Shown in pieces: positions 16,373 to 23,150 of a stretch of DNA of 64,000 nt; position 1 is the first letter of the stretch; the number at the start of each line of letters is the position of its first letter. A model generated the notes under the pieces. The model worked only from the letters and a program-made list of their open reading frames with translations. It did no database searches and was not told the origin of the DNA. The position numbers and the translations under genes are program-made. Source of the DNA: Guillardia theta CCMP2712 (taxonomy: Eukaryota; Protista; Cryptophyta); contig NW_005434652.1 in the NCBI RefSeq assembly GCF_000315625.1, forward strand, positions 364,384 to 428,383, in the 5' to 3' direction.

Positions 16373-17767
16373 ATGGCAGCGGGTAACAGGGAGATGCGTG
16401 CTCCCCTTGCGGTGATCGCCGAGCCCATTGGCATCGTAAACATACAAAGATCGAACTATAAAGGAGATGTGTCAACTTGCAAAGCTGGTAGTGTGCAGAC
16501 ACCATTGCAGGAACTGCGGATTCATCCATGGCAGCTGTTTTCGGAAGTCGAAGTTGGCGAGAAGCAGTCGAAAAAGAGAAAGACGATTTGGCCCGCGGAT
16601 CCAGAGCATGCAAACAAGCTCATTCTTATATTTGCTAAGGCCTGGTTGGACATGCCCTCTTCGATTGTTGAGAAAAATCCGCAAATCCACTGGACGCAGT
16701 TGCTTAATGCTGTTTCGGGCAAGGATCCCTTGATTAACGAAATACCTTGGAAATTAGCGCAAACGAAGTTTAACCAATACACTGTCGTTGTTCGCAAGGA
16801 GTTAGCACTGTCTCATGACAATTTCAGTGATCCGTTGCAATGTGATTGGTACCAGACTTGGAGCGAAGTTTTGAAAAGGCTTGACCGTGTTCTTGATGAG
16901 AAGAGAAGGCTGCGAGAAGATAATCAAGAACCATGCAAGGTCCTGCAAATTGCCCTGCATTGTCAATCACGGAGGAGAAGCGATGGACAACAGTTTGAAT
17001 CGAGGGAGCAGGCGGTCAAACAGAGAGAGAAACTTGTGCAAGAGCAAGAACGGATGATGAAGAACCGGGAGCAGGCTGTTCAGCAAAGGGAGGCAGCGAT
17101 CAAGAACAGAGAGAAGGAAGTGATCGGGAGAGAAGAGACCGTGAACTACCTGCAGCAAAGGTGCAAAGAGCTAGAAAAAAAGATCTCTAGCAAGGAGGAG
17201 GAGGTCCAGAAGAAGGAAGAAGGAGTGCGTAAGTCTCAACAGGAAGTTCAAGAGAAGTTAGAGGCTGCGCTCAAGGTGGAAGCTGAGGTGAAGCAGCGAG
17301 AGGAGGCAGTAGCAAAGAAGGAACAAGAAGCTCGACAGAAATCTGGAGGAACGGACTACAGCATGCGTGAAAAGGAGCAATTCATGTACATGAGGGAAAG
17401 GGAGTTGCTGATGAAGGAACAGATGATGTATGGAAGAGAGCTCGCGGTCAGCAAGAGAGAGCACACAGTCCATGAGGTGGATCAAAATTTGCGCAAGAAG
17501 GAACAAGAGCTCAATCTCAAAGAGAAATATGTACAAGACAGGTTGGATGCAGCGAAGGAAATGGAACAAACAGTCCGTTCACGAGAAATTACCTTGTACG
17601 ATGAAAGGACAAAGCATATGCAGACATTCATCGAAAACAAGGTTGAAAAAGATCGTGAAGAGCGAATGACAGAGTTTGCAAACTTTGCTCTGGTTGTCAA
17701 GCAGATGATGAGAGACGTTATCAAAGAAAGTGCAGAGAGAAATAAGGTTGTTCATGAACTCAAATAG
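16373..17767 (+). CDS. Myb/SANT-like (trihelix/MADF-type) domain followed by a long repetitive coiled coil
   Basis: 464-aa ORF with W..KLILIF..W..HWTQL..WKLAQTKFNQY..WYQTW pattern, then repeated RE(Q/E)AV(K/Q)QRE-like heptads. The domain call is by eye. Confidence 0.65.
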   Translation: MAAGNREMRAPLAVIAEPIGIVNIQRSNYKGDVSTCKAGSVQTPLQELRIHPWQLFSEVEVGEKQSKKRKTIWPADPEHANKLILIFAKAWLDMPSSIVEKNPQIHWTQLLNAVSGKDPLINEIPWKLAQTKFNQYTVVVRKELALSHDNFSDPLQCDWYQTWSEVLKRLDRVLDEKRRLREDNQEPCKVLQIALHCQSRRRSDGQQFESREQAVKQREKLVQEQERMMKNREQAVQQREAAIKNREKEVIGREETVNYLQQRCKELEKKISSKEEEVQKKEEGVRKSQQEVQEKLEAALKVEAEVKQREEAVAKKEQEARQKSGGTDYSMREKEQFMYMRERELLMKEQMMYGRELAVSKREHTVHEVDQNLRKKEQELNLKEKYVQDRLDAAKEMEQTVRSREITLYDERTKHMQTFIENKVEKDREERMTEFANFALVVKQMMRDVIKESAERNKVVHELK

Positions 17768-18016
17768 TTAGCCCTATTCGTGAACATGTTCACAAGCTCG
17801 CTGCTAGTAAATTCTTATTTGATATCTGAGTGACAACTATCGCACTCTGATGATATGTGCTTAGAAAAAATACTCTCTATTGACCGCATGCTCACTCCCT
17901 CTACATTTTGCATCCCTTCACATAGACTGACCCACTCGTACAGGATGAGGACGAAGAGCTGTCAGGTTATGCCGACTAGTCGGCAGTGAATGATCGAAAG
18001 ACCGTCCAATTATATC

Positions 18017-18805
18017 TCATGCAGATGGATCGACGACACTCCCGTCTTTCCATGTCGCACCCGACTGACGATGATAGGAAGTATCAGCAAGAGCAAAGCG
18101 TGGCCAGATCCCGTCTTACCTCCCAAACCTCCTGCTTCCATATAGGAACCTGAGAGGGGAATGCTGTAAGACTTACCAACTCTATTGGGTATGACCTTTT
18201 TCTTGAGCCTGTCCATAATCTCGGCTGTTGCCTCGAATGTTTCTTTTCTATGTATCCCAATCACCTTGCAAACAGCACTTCAGGAGAGAAAAATTTGTCG
18301 TAATTCACCTGCACGAGCACTGAAGCATCGCCCACCGGAACCTCTCCAACTGAGTGGCGAATTCGGACGAAGAGTAGCTGATGGCGATCCATGGCTTCTT
18401 GAGCAATCTGCTGAAGCATCTGGACGCAAGATCAAACCTCATGATGTTTGACTGGAGCTCCAAGAGAACCTTGGTGGCCATACTCTCTTTTGCTTCATAT
18501 CCTGTGGATGCCTTTGTCAGGCCCAGCCTTCCCATCAAAATTCACGCACTCAGCAACTTCAATATGCCATGAGAAGCACTTTCTTCATGTCTAGTCCCTG
18601 AGGGAATTTCAATGGATACCGAACGAGTGGACATGCTGCATACGTCCAAGGAACGCATTCTCCCCTCCTCCTTGCCTACACAGCCATATCAATCATCAGC
18701 CGTACGACTCACAGGAAGCAAATTCAACCTGTAGAATGGCGGTTCCTCGTAATTGACCGGCCCGTTAACAAGGGATACATCAACAGACTTGTCTTCTGTC
18801 GACAT
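18017..18805 (-). CDS. MOCS2B: Molybdopterin synthase catalytic subunit (MoaE), about 147 aa, multi-exon
   Basis: Spliced MSTEDKSVDVSLVNGPVNY..GGENAFLGRTR..LRYEAKESMATKMLQQIAQEAMDRHQLLFVRIRHSVGEVPVGDASVLVQVIGIHRKETFEATAEIMDRLKKKVPIWKQEVWESGATWK..*, with the MoaE motifs YEA, H..G.V.VG..S, HR..F and LK..VPIWK.E. Confidence 0.92.
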
Positions 18806-18869
18806 TGGAATCACCCAGGCCAGAACTACAGGACAGATCAACAAAATCATCTATCAGAGTTATCTCAAC

Positions 18870-19272
18870 CTATCCACCACTGATCGGAGGAATGAATGCA
18901 ATGTCGTCGGTTTCCTTCAGATCGAGTCTATCTTCAGGCAGGACGTAGTTGTCATTCACTGCGAGATAAGCACTGATGAATTGTGTCATGTTGCAGTGTG
19001 TATTTGACTTCCTTACCTATCTTTCAACACCCTCAGCTTCGGCTCAACCTTGCAATGCCCAAATTCAGATAGAAAGACAAAGAAAGTCTCCTAAAAGACC
19101 TCAAAGACGTGGTTCTCTAAGAAATCTCTACACAATATGCTCGATCCCTCCAGTCTGCTAGAATCGTCAGTTTTCCAACCTTCTCTTGCGTTTGGTCGTA
19201 CCTGCAGGTTATGTACAAAGATCCTCCTGCGAGCTCCTTAGCCTTGGCAAATAGATGAACCTTCACTTCCAT
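18870..19272 (-). CDS. MOCS2A: Molybdopterin synthase sulfur-carrier subunit (MoaD), 86 aa
   Basis: Exons 19272-19202, 19154-19100, 19048-19017 and 18972-18870 give MEVKVHLFAKAKELAGG..AYLAVNDNYV..DDIAFIPPISGG*, with the diagnostic C-terminal PPISGG. Confidence 0.93.
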
Positions 19273-19539
19273 CCACCTAGAGAAATCAAATCAACCGCGG
19301 CTTCTTACACGCAAACTGAGAAAGTTGTTTGCGGCATTCAAGGATCCATGTAAAACACCATGAAAGGAGTGAAATGAGTGTAGTAGTCCACTCTCTATCC
19401 TTCAATCTTCTTGCCGGTCTCCTCTCCTCTCCCCTCACTCGAAACTCATCTCCTCTCCCCTCGTGCCTCCTCCCATTCCTGCCGTCGTGAACATCCGACT
19501 GGTGGATCACCATCGTGTGGAAAGGTTTCAACGACCACC

Positions 19540-20660
19540 GGGTCATATGCGTTATTTCTACCGATGATTTGGAGGTAGGGTGATAGTAAAGAAGTGTAGT
19601 GGGGTCCGAGGGGTCTGCGGGGTAGGGTTGTCCAAGCTTGTAGGCTGGGTGGGTCGAGAACATTAGGGGAGGAGGGGGTTGGGGTGGGGTGGGATTCAGT
19701 TAGATCAGGGTAAGTCATTTGCAAATAAGGGGTGGTAGTGTGAGAGCACATATATAAAATCAGAGTAGGTAGGGTTTCTCGATAAGAGAACAGTAAAATG
19801 GAATTTGGGGGTAGGGGTAGTAATTTTTATACTGTAGGGGTGGGGAGAAAACGACTTAACCAGCAGGGAAGGGTGGGGTTATCAACATTCTGTCCAAGGG
19901 GGTCAGACGGAGATTGAAGGGTGGGTGGATTTTTAAATTTTGAAAGGGGTACTGTGATAAGAGGTAAAAAGTATACTAGGGTAGGGGTATCTAGGTGATG
20001 TCTAAAGGGTAGGGTGGTTGTTGGACGGAGCACCAGTAGTAAGGTCGACCCGAGGTCCTCTAGGAGGTAGGGCGATTGCGCGATGATAGTAGGGGTGGGT
20101 ACCATTTTACTGTTTCGTCGTGGGTACTATTCCCCAGAAATTTTATGGTGGGGTAGGTGGCTTCAACTAATAAGAAATGGTAGCGAGTATGGTAGGGTAT
20201 ATGTCAAGGGGGTGGTCTTGAAAGCCTGAACGAAGGGTAGGGAGCCGTTTTCGAGAGGTGGGGTATTGAGAATGTAGGGGGTACGGTACAATTCTCTACC
20301 GGTACCAAGATCGATTCTCTGGCTAGTAGTGGTCAGGGTGGAATAAAAAAATGGTTGAAGGTGGTAGGGGTACAAATTATGATATGTGTAGGTAGGGGTG
20401 GTGTAGGGGGGTCAGGGGGTATGCAAAGGTACTGGGATTGTGAGCAACTATGTACGTAGGGGGTTCGACAGGTAAAATTGCCGGGTGGGTGGTATGATGG
20501 TCCAAACCTCAGGGGTACATGGCTGGAATGTGGGGTTCTTATTTGCTTGGGGTGGAGAATCAGGGGAAAGGGTGGGGTTCATTCTATATAGATGGAGGGT
20601 GACTACAGGACAAAGGGGGTGCATATTTCCAAGGATAGGTAGGGGTAGTCTCAGCGCAAA
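19540..20660. promoter_or_regulatory. G-skewed GGGGT/GGGTA-rich intergenic tract between divergent genes
   Basis: Dozens of GGGGT/GGGTA/GTAGGG words on the + strand and no convincing coding frame. Confidence 0.5.
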
Positions 20661-21050
20661 GGCCCGGAGGATGGCGAGGACGAGAGCAGAGCCGAGAGTA
20701 AGCGAGGAGGAGAGGAGGAGGAGGAGGAGGAGGTAGAGGGAACCTGAAGCTTGAGGAAACAAACTCATCAAGACTGTGCGAGCCTGGGGCCGTGCTCTTA
20801 GCCTCCTTCAGTGTCCAGATAAGTTGTACATTGTCCTGGTTGTGTTTATCCAGCTTTGGACGGCATCAGAGTGGGAGATACAGCAGGACGGGGGTTGGCG
20901 GCACATTTCCAGCATTTGCGATCTTCTTGTTCAGTTACGAATCTAAAGTAGCGTACACCAGAAAACAGTTTTTCTGGCCCCTTCTGGTCGAAGCGCTTCC
21001 CAAGGAAAGGAGCCCTGCGTTGTCGAAAAACTTGGATATATTTGACTAGG

Positions 21051-23150
21051 ATGGATGATCTGACTTTGCACGGTTTTCATGGGGACAGTCTTCCTCGACC
21101 CTCCTCCCCAGACAATCTGCATGCTCTGTTGGAGGATGTCGAGAACTTCATCCCTGGTAGCAATGAAAGAACGAACTCGCTGGAACAGCTGAGGAGTGCG
21201 CTTGTTGATCGTTCTTCCATGCTGAAACCCAAGGGGTTGGGCGATCATGACATGTCTCGATCTGGCACTCGAACAAGGGGGGGGACAGGAGCTTCCTCTT
21301 TCCTGCATGGAGGAGTATCCCCTGACGATACACACATGCTCGATGACCTTTACGGTGAAAGCACCGGCGGCATGTCTTCTATCCCGGAGCATTCTGGCAC
21401 CGATGGGTTGTGGGGTCCTGCGCATACACACTTTGTAAGTGCACCTATGTGCTCTGGGACTGACGTGCTCTTTCTTGTTGAGTGGTGTTTTGCTGATTTG
21501 ATGCTTGAAATGCTGAAGGGACAAAGTTTGATTTCTGTTGCAGGATGCGAGTGAGTATGACGACATCGAGGGAACTTTTCAAATGGATGATATAGGAGAC
21601 ACTCTTCCCCCAACCATGCCTACGACGTACTCTCATCTACACTCGAGGGCAACCACGACGATCTCTAGCGCAGCAACGAAGCAGGTGCATGAGTTGCATG
21701 GGGTATGTATCCCAGTTGACCCTTCTTTGCATTCGTGCAGGCTACCAGCGCCTCGATACAGTCACACTCGGCGGGAACAACAGCTGCACGAATCATTGGA
21801 GGTCCACATGTAAACCGCTCTATCCCTGGATCTCAGACTTCAAGCGCGTAAGCAAAGCATGTCTGTCGATTTCTTATCAAATAATGTTGTCTGCCCTCCA
21901 GTGCTGCTGCTATAATTCAAGATGTTGGCTTCGCCGCGGTGGCTGCTGGAGTTCCTGGTGCTGCTGGAGTACTGAGCGGAAACTTGAATATCGGTGACTC
22001 TACAAAATTCCTTGATCACTGCGGTGCTGACGAAGCACGTATAGGGAAATCAGCTGCATCAGCCGCTGTGAGATCTCCAGTGGCAAGACCTCCGTCCAAG
22101 ACGAATGTTCAGGTTGCAAGCAGTACACGCAATTAGAAAACCACTGACATGTCTCGTGTATCGGCAGATGTCAAATTTAGCTCGAGAAGAACAAGCTGCT
22201 ATTCCACATGTTTCTGCAGACGTGATGTCATTTGGCGCATGGACTCTTCTGAGTAAATGACAGGATTTGGGTGGAGCACCGGTGGTTCCGATGCAGCCTG
22301 AGCCTGATAAACGCTTAAGCCACAAGGAAGTTGAACAGCGTAGAAGAGAGAAAGCGAAACAGGTAACGTGTGAAACTATCGTTGCTTGTTGCTAACAGGA
22401 TGGCTTTGCAGTATTTTGATGAGTTACGTGGGCTGCTTCCGTATGGTGGCGATAGTGCCAAATTCGATAAAAATGCCATTCTGCACCATTCAATCGCATT
22501 AATCAAGCAGCTTTTAAGCGAGTTAGAACAGGTGGAACATGGCTTGTTGTTTGTTACGCAGGGATGAATGTCATCTGTTACAGGAAGAGGCAAGCTCTGC
22601 GAAGACTGAGCAGGAACCAGGGACTCCAACCATGGCTGAATTTCGATGTTGCTTTGATGTAACGCGGCAACCATTATGCTTCACGGGGCTGGATAGCAGG
22701 ATATGGGAAGCTAACACTGCCTTCTGCACTCTGCTTGGGTACTTCACCATCACATCTGCTCGTATTCCTAATGAGAAAACAGGTATACAAGGTTGGAGAT
22801 TAGTGGGCTTTCACTGCTCAGTGCTACCGCTCCTGCGGACACAGAAGCTTCTTCAGAGCGCTGGCATCACATGATTAATTCGCCACAGGTCGGCGACTTG
22901 AATGAGTTGCTTCCACCTAATATCTATGATCGAGCAGGCGACTCCGGTGTCCTATATGTGCAAACTGCAAAGAAAAGATTCACAACAGGTATCGCGTTCT
23001 CTCGTTCTTCCTCTGTGCTTCTCGGCTCTGCCATCTTCGCGCGTCTTCTGACTGTTTTGGGTAAAGGTCTCTTGTAATATCGATTTGAGCATTGTAAGGC
23101 GGAACGGCAAAGCACACTGCTTCCTAGTGGCCGCGAATCCGAGCCTTTGA
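21051..23150 (+). CDS. bHLH-PAS transcription factor
   Basis: bHLH: KRLSHKEVEQRRREKAKQ|YFDELRGLLP..KFDKNAILHHSIALIKQL. PAS: FRCCFDVTRQPLCFTGLDSRIWEANTAFCTLLG|YTRLEISGLSLL..P.D..CKLQRKD..CNIDLSIVR. Confidence 0.9.

What the first reader, a model, noticed from the sequence alone, without database searches (positions are those of the whole stretch)
18017..19272. Apparent bicistronic MOCS2A-MOCS2B (moaD-moaE) transcription unit with an intron between the cistrons
Seen: the MoaD TAG (18872-18870) lies only 64 nt from the MoaE ATG (18805) on the same strand. The stop is immediately followed by GT(TGAG)...TCCTGTAG, a 44-nt element of typical local intron size, so splicing would leave a 20-nt spacer. 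That leaves little room for a terminator plus promoter. The two ORFs are out of frame, so MoaD keeps its free C-terminal Gly-Gly. The MoaD CDS has no internal Met and only one out-of-frame AUG (a 12-codon ORF), as expected for leaky scanning or reinitiation. Known: MoaD needs a free GG for thiocarboxylation; animal MOCS2 is bicistronic; plants use separate CNX6/CNX7 genes; bacteria have moaD-moaE in this order. Inference: one polycistronic nuclear mRNA co-expresses both synthase subunits, in a lineage where I know of no such report. The ORF track does not show it.
Basis: partly seen in the sequence, partly recalled or inferred. Interest (0 to 1): 0.88.

Follow-up and report, generated by a model that had tools for sequence, protein, structure and literature searches.

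The report
Chimeric bicistronic molybdopterin-synthase mRNA in cryptophytes
A cryptophyte alga (Guillardia theta) and its relatives appear to make both subunits of a molybdenum-cofactor enzyme from one spliced nuclear mRNA, as animals do, but here the first gene is eukaryotic and the second came from bacteria, suggesting a transferred gene can be expressed as the second reading frame of its partner's mRNA.

Summary
Observation confirmed. The genome is Guillardia theta; these are the only moaD and moaE found in it. RNA-type contigs from three studies each cover both ORFs with 11 introns removed, including the 44-nt intron 18826-18869. That leaves MoaD (86 aa, ...PISGG-stop), a 20-nt spacer and out-of-frame MoaE (148 aa). 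No fusion was seen. Nine other cryptophyte-type sequences show moaD-spacer-moaE on one intron-free contig, and two genomic loci have 15- and 27-nt spacers, so the bicistron is conserved while the intercistronic intron is not. Leaky-scanning signatures are strong: purine at -3 in 0/10 moaD versus 8/10 moaE starts, no internal Met in 10 MoaDs, and no AUG in 940 nt of spacers (12 expected). New: the pair is chimeric. MoaE nests within Planctomycetota (Phycisphaerales) MoaE (100/100; grouping with eukaryotes rejected, p=0.0005), whereas MoaD is eukaryote-type, and the closest bacterial moaE genes lack an adjacent moaD (20/20 genomes). It is therefore not an operon relic. Not shown: single molecules, proteins, the mechanism; spliced-leader trans-splicing remains a minor rival. 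No published cryptophyte report found; the scan flagged three other unchecked bicistron candidates here.

The parts
19202..19272 (-). moaD/MOCS2A exon 1 (coding); AUG at 19272 in weak context (U at -3)
19155..19201 (-). moaD intron 1 (47 nt, second AG of a NAGNAG used)
   Evidence: joint 19154|19202
19100..19154 (-). moaD exon 2
19049..19099 (-). moaD intron 2 (51 nt)
19017..19048 (-). moaD exon 3
18973..19016 (-). moaD intron 3 (44 nt)
18870..18972 (-). moaD exon 4, ends PPISGG-TAG; the AG of the stop codon is the exon end of the next donor
   Evidence: Pfam ThiS 25.2 bits, over cut-off
18917..18955 (-). only AUG between the two starts: out-of-frame 12-codon ORF, weak context (U at -3)
18826..18869 (-). 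intercistronic intron, 44 nt, GT-AG; holds an AUG (18850) in frame with MoaE; not conserved in relatives
   Evidence: spliced in 3 of 3 contig sets
18806..18825 (-). 20-nt spliced spacer, no AUG; a second stop in the moaD frame 4 codons after the TAG
18729..18805 (-). moaE/MOCS2B first coding stretch, AUG at 18805
   Evidence: spliced protein identical to GUITHDRAFT_151856
18017..18728 (-). rest of moaE: introns 18676-18728, 18598-18643, 18502-18549, 18420-18469, 18265-18308, 18150-18195, 18065-18119; TGA 18019-18017; 148 aa, Phycisphaerales-type MoaE
   Evidence: Pfam MoaE over cut-off on exon 18309-18419; trees
17695..18016 (-). shared 3' UTR; contigs end at 17796, 17780, 17695; raw sense reads of run X19 pile at 17713-18067
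19277..19296 (-). candidate spliced-leader acceptor (branch-like TTGAT, pyrimidine run, TAG) 4 nt before the moaD AUG; no matching cis intron in RNA
   Evidence: X2 main contig starts exactly at the AG (19278), upstream contig 19-fold shallower; SL ends in AG (PMC5619915); inferred, no SL read seen
19279..19519 (-). weakly covered upstream region (outron or long leader) with 7 AUGs

Best explanation
One promoter upstream of 19272 makes a pre-mRNA that is cis-spliced at 11 introns (and probably given the 17-nt spliced leader at 19277|19276, a 21-nt leader) into one mature mRNA with two separate ORFs. Some scanning ribosomes start at the weak moaD AUG and make the 86-aa sulfur carrier with a free C-terminal Gly-Gly. 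The rest leak past it, cross about 280 nt almost free of AUGs and start at the moaE AUG, making the 148-aa catalytic subunit; the two assemble into molybdopterin synthase. The locus is a chimera: moaD is the eukaryotic MOCS2A, moaE came from a Phycisphaerales-like planctomycete before the sampled cryptophytes diverged, and no eukaryote-type MOCS2B was found in this genome. Shown: gene structure, splicing in assemblies, conservation, sequence signatures, MoaE phylogeny. Inferred: full-length single molecules, translation of both ORFs, leaky scanning, SL use, order of evolutionary events.
For: Single contigs over both ORFs in 3 studies, lengths equal to the spliced model; stop and start are 26 nt apart after splicing, so single 31-mers hold both. 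MMETSP gives MoaD and a MoaE isoform the same transcript number in this species (Transcript_28686) and in Hemiselmis andersenii (Transcript_7162). X19 sense reads pile only at the moaE 3' end, none at 18281-19061. Same layout in 9 other cryptophyte-type intron-free contigs, spacers 22-212 nt, all three frame offsets, and 15- and 27-nt genomic spacers. Purine at -3: moaD 0/10, moaE 8/10 (Fisher p=0.0007), stand-alone eukaryotic moaD 16/19. Internal Met 0 in 10 MoaDs; out-of-frame AUGs 7 versus 13 in codon shuffles (p=0.02); 0 AUG in 940 nt of spacers versus 12 expected. These match the features reported for algal bicistrons (PMC11291117) and the mechanism given for human MOCS2 (PMC9607355). MoaE in Planctomycetota clade 100/100, AU p=0.0005 against joining eukaryotes. 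MoaD: AU rejects joining planctomycete MoaD (p=0.004), not eukaryotes (p=0.61). One moaD, one moaE, no eukaryote-type MOCS2B in the genome.
Against: No long read, ribosome or protein data. Contigs drop rare isoforms, so a minor SL-moaE or internally started transcript would be invisible. In G. theta itself the moaE AUG is also weak (C at -3), as in one relative. The species are related, so the p-values overstate independence. My genome-wide Kozak baseline for G. theta is thin (4 of 5 probable starts and 29 of 45 long-ORF first AUGs have a purine at -3). X19's library type is not on record, so reading it as 3'-end tags is an inference from 87 reads. The MoaD tree has 87 columns and is poorly resolved.
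Confidence: 0.75

Rival explanations
1. Operon-like processing: the acceptor at 18826 also takes the spliced leader in trans, giving a monocistronic SL-moaE mRNA that supplies most MoaE; the cis-spliced form serves MoaD.
For: G. theta has SL trans-splicing on at least a fifth of genes (PMC5619915); 21 SL gene copies in this genome; the acceptor lies 20 nt before the moaE AUG, within the usual SL distance; a 15-nt SL tip could be clipped from contigs.
Against: All three contig sets run through the cis joint without a break, while X2 does break at the candidate moaD SL site. Relatives have no intron in the spacer. Weak moaD context and AUG depletion inside moaD would be unnecessary. No SL suffix of 8 nt or more in 16 relatives' contigs checked. 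Roy found no sign of operons.
Confidence: 0.1
2. Bicistronic mRNA, but MoaE is made by termination-reinitiation after the moaD stop.
For: Spacer only 20 nt here and 15-27 nt in three relatives; AUG-free spacers fit this too; the G. theta moaE AUG context is weak.
Against: Spacers reach 116-212 nt in five relatives; ORF1 is 86-94 codons, long for reinitiation (PMC11291117); reinitiation gains from a strong, not a conserved weak, first AUG and does not predict AUG loss inside ORF1.
Confidence: 0.08
3. Two overlapping monocistronic transcripts (internal promoter inside moaD; moaD 3' UTR running into moaE) merged by the assembler.
For: The tool warns that a contig across two genes shows no single transcript; Logan depth is flat by construction.
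Against: No break in any of about 10 species' assemblies; 15-nt genomic spacer in one relative; no X19 reads near a moaD 3' end; translation signatures make sense only on a shared mRNA.
Confidence: 0.05
4. A MoaD-MoaE fusion protein (as in Mycobacterium MoaX, or splicing as in MOCS1AB) is the working product.
For: Donors at 18880 or 18877 with the 18826 acceptor would give in-frame fusions.
Against: Those fusions lose Gly-Gly; neither joint is in RNA; no fusion-length cryptophyte protein in a search whose length window covered it; frame offsets vary among species and stops are TAA, TAG or TGA.
Confidence: 0.02
5. (Origin only) The pair is the relic of a whole bacterial moaD-moaE operon transferred together.
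For: Bacterial gene order; MoaE is bacterial; more distant members of the same class often have moaD beside moaE.
Against: In 20 of 20 genomes with the closest MoaE (up to 203 bits), the moaD match lies on another contig or at least 38 kb away and scores 20-41 bits on the cryptophyte profile, versus 48-86 for eukaryotic MOCS2A (eukaryotic rows were partly chosen as top hits); AU p=0.004; named top hits of the MoaD search are eukaryotes.
Confidence: 0.08

Closest known systems
Animal bicistronic MOCS2 (human MOCS2A/MOCS2B, PMC9370521, PMC9607355; Drosophila CG10238, PMC2276209)
   Same: Small subunit first, large second, one mRNA, free Gly-Gly kept; leaky scanning reported for human. Invertebrate-like loci fetched here have non-overlapping ORFs and the same weak-first, strong-second contexts (2/11 versus 11/11 purine at -3).
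   Different: Human ORFs overlap by 77 nt, these do not. The second cistron here is not orthologous to animal MOCS2B but a planctomycete-derived xenolog. Different eukaryotic supergroup, with SL trans-splicing.
Exclusively polycistronic nuclear loci of green algae (PMC7896298, PMC11291117)
   Same: Short ORF1, short inter-ORF, variable frame, weak ORF1 context, AUG depletion before ORF2.
   Different: Neither main text mentions cryptophytes or this gene pair (supplements not held). Those loci rest on Iso-Seq, ChIP and proteomics, which are lacking here.
SL-resolved operons (nematodes, trypanosomes); cryptomonad SL trans-splicing (PMC5619915)
   Same: Organism has a spliced leader; an acceptor lies just before ORF2; probable SL site before ORF1.
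   Different: The acceptor before ORF2 is used in cis, so the mature mRNA stays bicistronic; Roy reported no evidence for widespread operons in G. theta.
Bacterial moaD-moaE operons and MoaX/MoaD-MoaE fusions (PMC4326299)
   Same: Same gene order and enzyme; MoaE of bacterial type.
   Different: MoaD is eukaryote-type; nearest bacterial moaE genes stand apart from moaD; spliced nuclear gene; no fusion.

Membership tests
MoaD/MOCS2A sulfur carrier | ThiS/MoaD family match | tested here: met
   exon 4 scores 25.2 bits, cut-off 22.5; P0061 carries PF02597
MoaD/MOCS2A sulfur carrier | free C-terminal Gly-Gly followed by a stop | tested here: met
   PISGG-stop in the spliced model and all 10 cryptophyte sequences
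MoaE/MOCS2B catalytic subunit | MoaE family match with conserved active-site His-Arg and Lys residues | tested here: met
   PF02391 over cut-off; H105, R106, K121, K128, E130 invariant (their role is from my own knowledge of E. coli MoaE); PDB MoaE hits to E 6e-19
Molybdopterin synthase | D2E2 complex converting cPMP to molybdopterin | not testable with these tools
   needs biochemistry
Bicistronic nuclear mRNA (green-algal criteria) | transcript spanning both ORFs | tested here: met
   assembled contigs in 3 studies plus 9 relatives; short-read assemblies, not long reads
Bicistronic nuclear mRNA (green-algal criteria) | start site only upstream of ORF1, poly(A) only after ORF2 | tested here: inconclusive
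   87 X19 reads sit at the moaE 3' end, none near the moaD stop, library type unknown; contigs cannot show starts
Bicistronic nuclear mRNA (green-algal criteria) | both proteins translated in vivo | not testable with these tools
   no proteomics; conservation of both ORFs and single-copy status argue for it
Leaky-scanning bicistron | weak ORF1 start context | tested here: met
   0/10 purine at -3 versus 8/10 for ORF2 and 16/19 for stand-alone moaD; genome-wide baseline thin
Leaky-scanning bicistron | AUG depletion upstream of ORF2 | tested here: met
   7 AUG in about 3.6 kb over 10 species; spacers 0 versus 12 expected
Leaky-scanning bicistron | ORF2 output falls when ORF1 context is strengthened | not testable with these tools
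   reporter experiment needed
Orthologue of the animal MOCS2 locus | second cistron orthologous to eukaryotic MOCS2B | tested here: not met
   AU test rejects cryptophyte + eukaryote MoaE clade, p=0.0005
SL-resolved operon | downstream ORF receives the SL and becomes monocistronic | tested here: inconclusive
   cis joint dominant in 3 of 3 assemblies; minor SL form cannot be excluded with contigs
Transferred bacterial moaD-moaE operon | both genes from the same bacterial clade, adjacent in the donor group | tested here: not met
MoaX-type fusion | single in-frame MoaD-MoaE ORF | tested here: not met

The most novel reading that the evidence does not exclude
The bicistron arose anew in the cryptophyte ancestor when a planctomycete moaE landed behind the native MOCS2A gene, was expressed by leaky scanning without needing its own promoter, and displaced the native MOCS2B: a convergent re-invention of the animal MOCS2 layout and a route by which transferred genes get expressed, in an organism whose spliced-leader machinery leaves the message bicistronic. 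The alternative, xenologous replacement of cistron 2 in an ancient eukaryotic bicistron, is about as likely and also unreported in the papers I could search.
Probability: 0.4. Interest if true: 0.85.

Novelty: new variant of a known kind. Interest (0 to 1): 0.72.

Why it matters
Mendel's review calls the MOCS2 bicistron enigmatic and contrasts it with separate plant genes (PMC9370521). Finding the same layout, with leaky-scanning signatures, conserved across cryptophytes but with a bacterial second cistron means either convergence or an ancient eukaryotic bicistron that survived gene replacement. Both point to selection for co-translation of the two subunits, and both are testable by a survey of protist genomes. 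It would also be a mature bicistronic mRNA in a lineage with spliced-leader trans-splicing reported to lack operons, and it warns that annotation misses such first cistrons: this MoaD is in the protein collection only from MMETSP, while MoaE has a genome annotation.

Tried and rejected
Pfam ThiS scan of the whole genome found nothing because of short exons; an alignment search found only this locus. Baffinella frigidus moaE locus was too repetitive and gapped to read the spacer; its MoaD and MoaE lie on scaffolds of the same length, 823,119 nt. P0038, first taken for bacterial, proved to be a cryptophyte genomic locus. P0063, the best non-cryptophyte MoaD hit, ends its contig, so its neighbour is unknown. 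A first L039 splice was off by one base and was corrected (contexts unchanged). A genome-wide Kozak baseline gave too few starts. No PDB sequence hit for MoaD. The ESM Atlas did not identify the L052 organism. Supplements of Roy 2017 and Gallaher 2021 are not held. Ten literature searches found no report of a cryptophyte bicistron or of planctomycete-derived MoaE. Rejected: fusion, readthrough (variable stops and frames), operon relic, conserved role of the intercistronic intron.

Full report
Identity and method. The window lies in an 87,145,349-base, 669-contig assembly. The MoaE encoded here is identical to GUITHDRAFT_151856 of Guillardia theta CCMP2712, and the published cryptomonad spliced leader followed by GT occurs 21 times. 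Later full-length searches used database proteins returned by the tools (P0010, P0061 and relatives). The joined model was used only inside local scripts.

The observation. Three RNA-type contig sets from three studies each give one contig across both ORFs with the same 11 GT-AG skips, including 18826-18869; my spliced model has exactly their lengths, 1196, 971 and 1092 nt. The product is MoaD (86 aa, single Met, ending PISGG), TAG, a 20-nt spacer, and MoaE (148 aa) in another frame. Exons match Pfam ThiS and MoaE above cut-off. These are the only moaD and moaE found in the genome, and a eukaryote-type MOCS2B query finds nothing. The one raw-read run has 87 short, essentially all sense reads, piled at 17713-18067 and absent from 18281-19061; two cross a moaE splice joint. 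If it is a 3'-tag library (inferred, not on record), there is one 3' end, after moaE. Contigs are not molecules, so full-length bicistronic RNA is strongly indicated, not shown.

Conservation. MoaE homologues at 60-70% identity form one clade (99-100 support) that includes Hemiselmis andersenii and Cryptomonas paramecium; the unnamed members are taken as cryptophytes from the tree. Every such contig read that reaches far enough upstream has a complete or 5'-truncated moaD ending ISGG-stop before moaE: nine intron-free sequence types with spacers of 116, 38, 153, 148, 22, 125, 212, 86 and 49 nt. Two genomic loci have spacers of 15 nt (L039) and 27 nt (L037; intron right after the moaE ATG, inferred from GT-AG and homology), and L044 has the same 148-nt spacer as its transcript. 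So the intercistronic intron is a local feature of G. theta, while the adjacency is ancestral to the sampled group. MMETSP numbers MoaD and MoaE on the same transcript in two species.

Mechanism. Across ten sequences the moaD AUG never has a purine at -3 (nine U, one C), whereas eight moaE AUGs do (p=0.0007), as do 16 of 19 eukaryote-type moaD genes without a moaE neighbour. No MoaD has an internal Met; out-of-frame AUGs number 7 against 13 in codon shuffles (p=0.02); 940 nt of unalignable spacers hold no AUG against 12 expected. These are the features that distinguish leaky scanning from reinitiation in green algae (PMC11291117) and leaky scanning is the mechanism given for human MOCS2 (PMC9607355). 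The species are related, so the p-values are optimistic; G. theta's own moaE AUG is weak; the genome-wide baseline is thin. Fusion is not supported: the two in-frame alternative donors lose Gly-Gly and are absent from RNA, and frame offsets differ among species.

Spliced leader. G. theta trans-splices a 17-nt leader ending in AG, and Roy found no widespread operons (PMC5619915). The main X2 contig begins exactly at the AG of an unpaired acceptor 4 nt before the moaD AUG, with a 19-fold shallower contig upstream, a region holding seven AUGs. This fits SL addition at 19277|19276, but no SL read was seen. The 18826 acceptor could also take the leader; no assembly breaks there, relatives lack that intron, and the leaky signatures would then be pointless, so I give this rival 0.1.

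Origin. The best non-cryptophyte MoaE matches are Planctomycetota, mostly Phycisphaerales where named. In a 37-row mixture-model tree cryptophytes sit inside that clade (100/100), apart from eukaryotic MOCS2B (99/99), and forcing them with eukaryotes is rejected (p-AU 0.0005); they share an N-terminal Pro-Pro motif and a two-residue insertion with it. The root was not inferred, but the nesting among diverse bacteria favours transfer to cryptophytes. MoaD behaves oppositely: named top hits are diatom, green algal, plant and animal MOCS2A; joining it to planctomycete MoaD is rejected (p=0.004) and joining it to eukaryotes is not (p=0.61), on a short, weakly resolved alignment. In 20 of 20 genomes with the closest moaE the moaD match is elsewhere and distant (20-41 bits). 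The bicistron is therefore a chimera, not a transferred operon. Whether the foreign gene replaced cistron 2 of an old bicistron or created a new one is open: eleven other eukaryote-type loci fetched here also have adjacent moaD-moaE, most animal-like but L052 and L084 possibly not, while many others lack a neighbour.

Comparison and verdict. It works like animal MOCS2 and the green-algal bicistrons but fails the orthology test for the second cistron and the tests for a bacterial operon or a MoaX fusion. I found no paper describing it in the open literature searched; subscription papers are not covered. The scan's notes list three other unchecked bicistron candidates in this genome, which I could not test. 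Verdict: real, conserved, new variant of a known kind; bicistronic mRNA about 0.9, leaky scanning about 0.75, chimeric origin about 0.85; interest 0.72.

Noticed in passing
window 16373-17767 (+): Intronless 464-aa coiled-coil-rich ORF with no Pfam match, convergent with moaE; the longest moaE 3' UTR contig (to 17695) overlaps its 3' end by about 70 nt.
   Followed up: partly
window 19560-20700: About 1.1 kb upstream of moaD rich in short GGGGTAG/GGGTAGGG-like motifs on the + strand with no tandem period or long repeat; possible repeat remnant or G-quadruplex-prone region.
   Followed up: partly
window 22267-22570 (+): Exons that look like a bHLH domain, in a gene divergent from moaD (by eye only).
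   Followed up: no
L052 59-916; L053: Intron-free contig with MoaD grouping weakly with diatom/stramenopile MOCS2A, a 39-nt AUG-free spacer and a eukaryote-type MoaE: possible bicistronic MOCS2 in another protist lineage; organism not identified.
   Followed up: partly
L084 1873-2876; L086: Low-GC genomic locus with moaD, a 7-nt spacer and an intron-containing eukaryote-type moaE with a His-rich N-terminus; looks fungal-like to me, unidentified.
   Followed up: partly
P0027/P0050: Long-branch member of the cryptophyte MoaE clade with an N-terminal extension (MMETSP, unnamed); could be an early-branching cryptist and would date the transfer.
   Followed up: no
window 18065-18728 (moaE introns): MMETSP holds many aberrant MoaE isoforms of this gene from retained introns (P0002, P0003, P0008, P0011, P0012, P0026, P0029); none is a MoaD fusion.
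   Followed up: partly
L007 2000-5600: Baffinella frigidus moaE region holds several partial repeats of its own exons amid short tandem repeats and gaps; assembly artefact or exon duplication.
   Followed up: no
G001-G003 and 20 further genomes: This Phycisphaerales-type moaE stands apart from moaD; in three of the four GTDB loci read it is followed (directly or one gene on) by what looks like an endonuclease III gene (by eye).
   Followed up: partly
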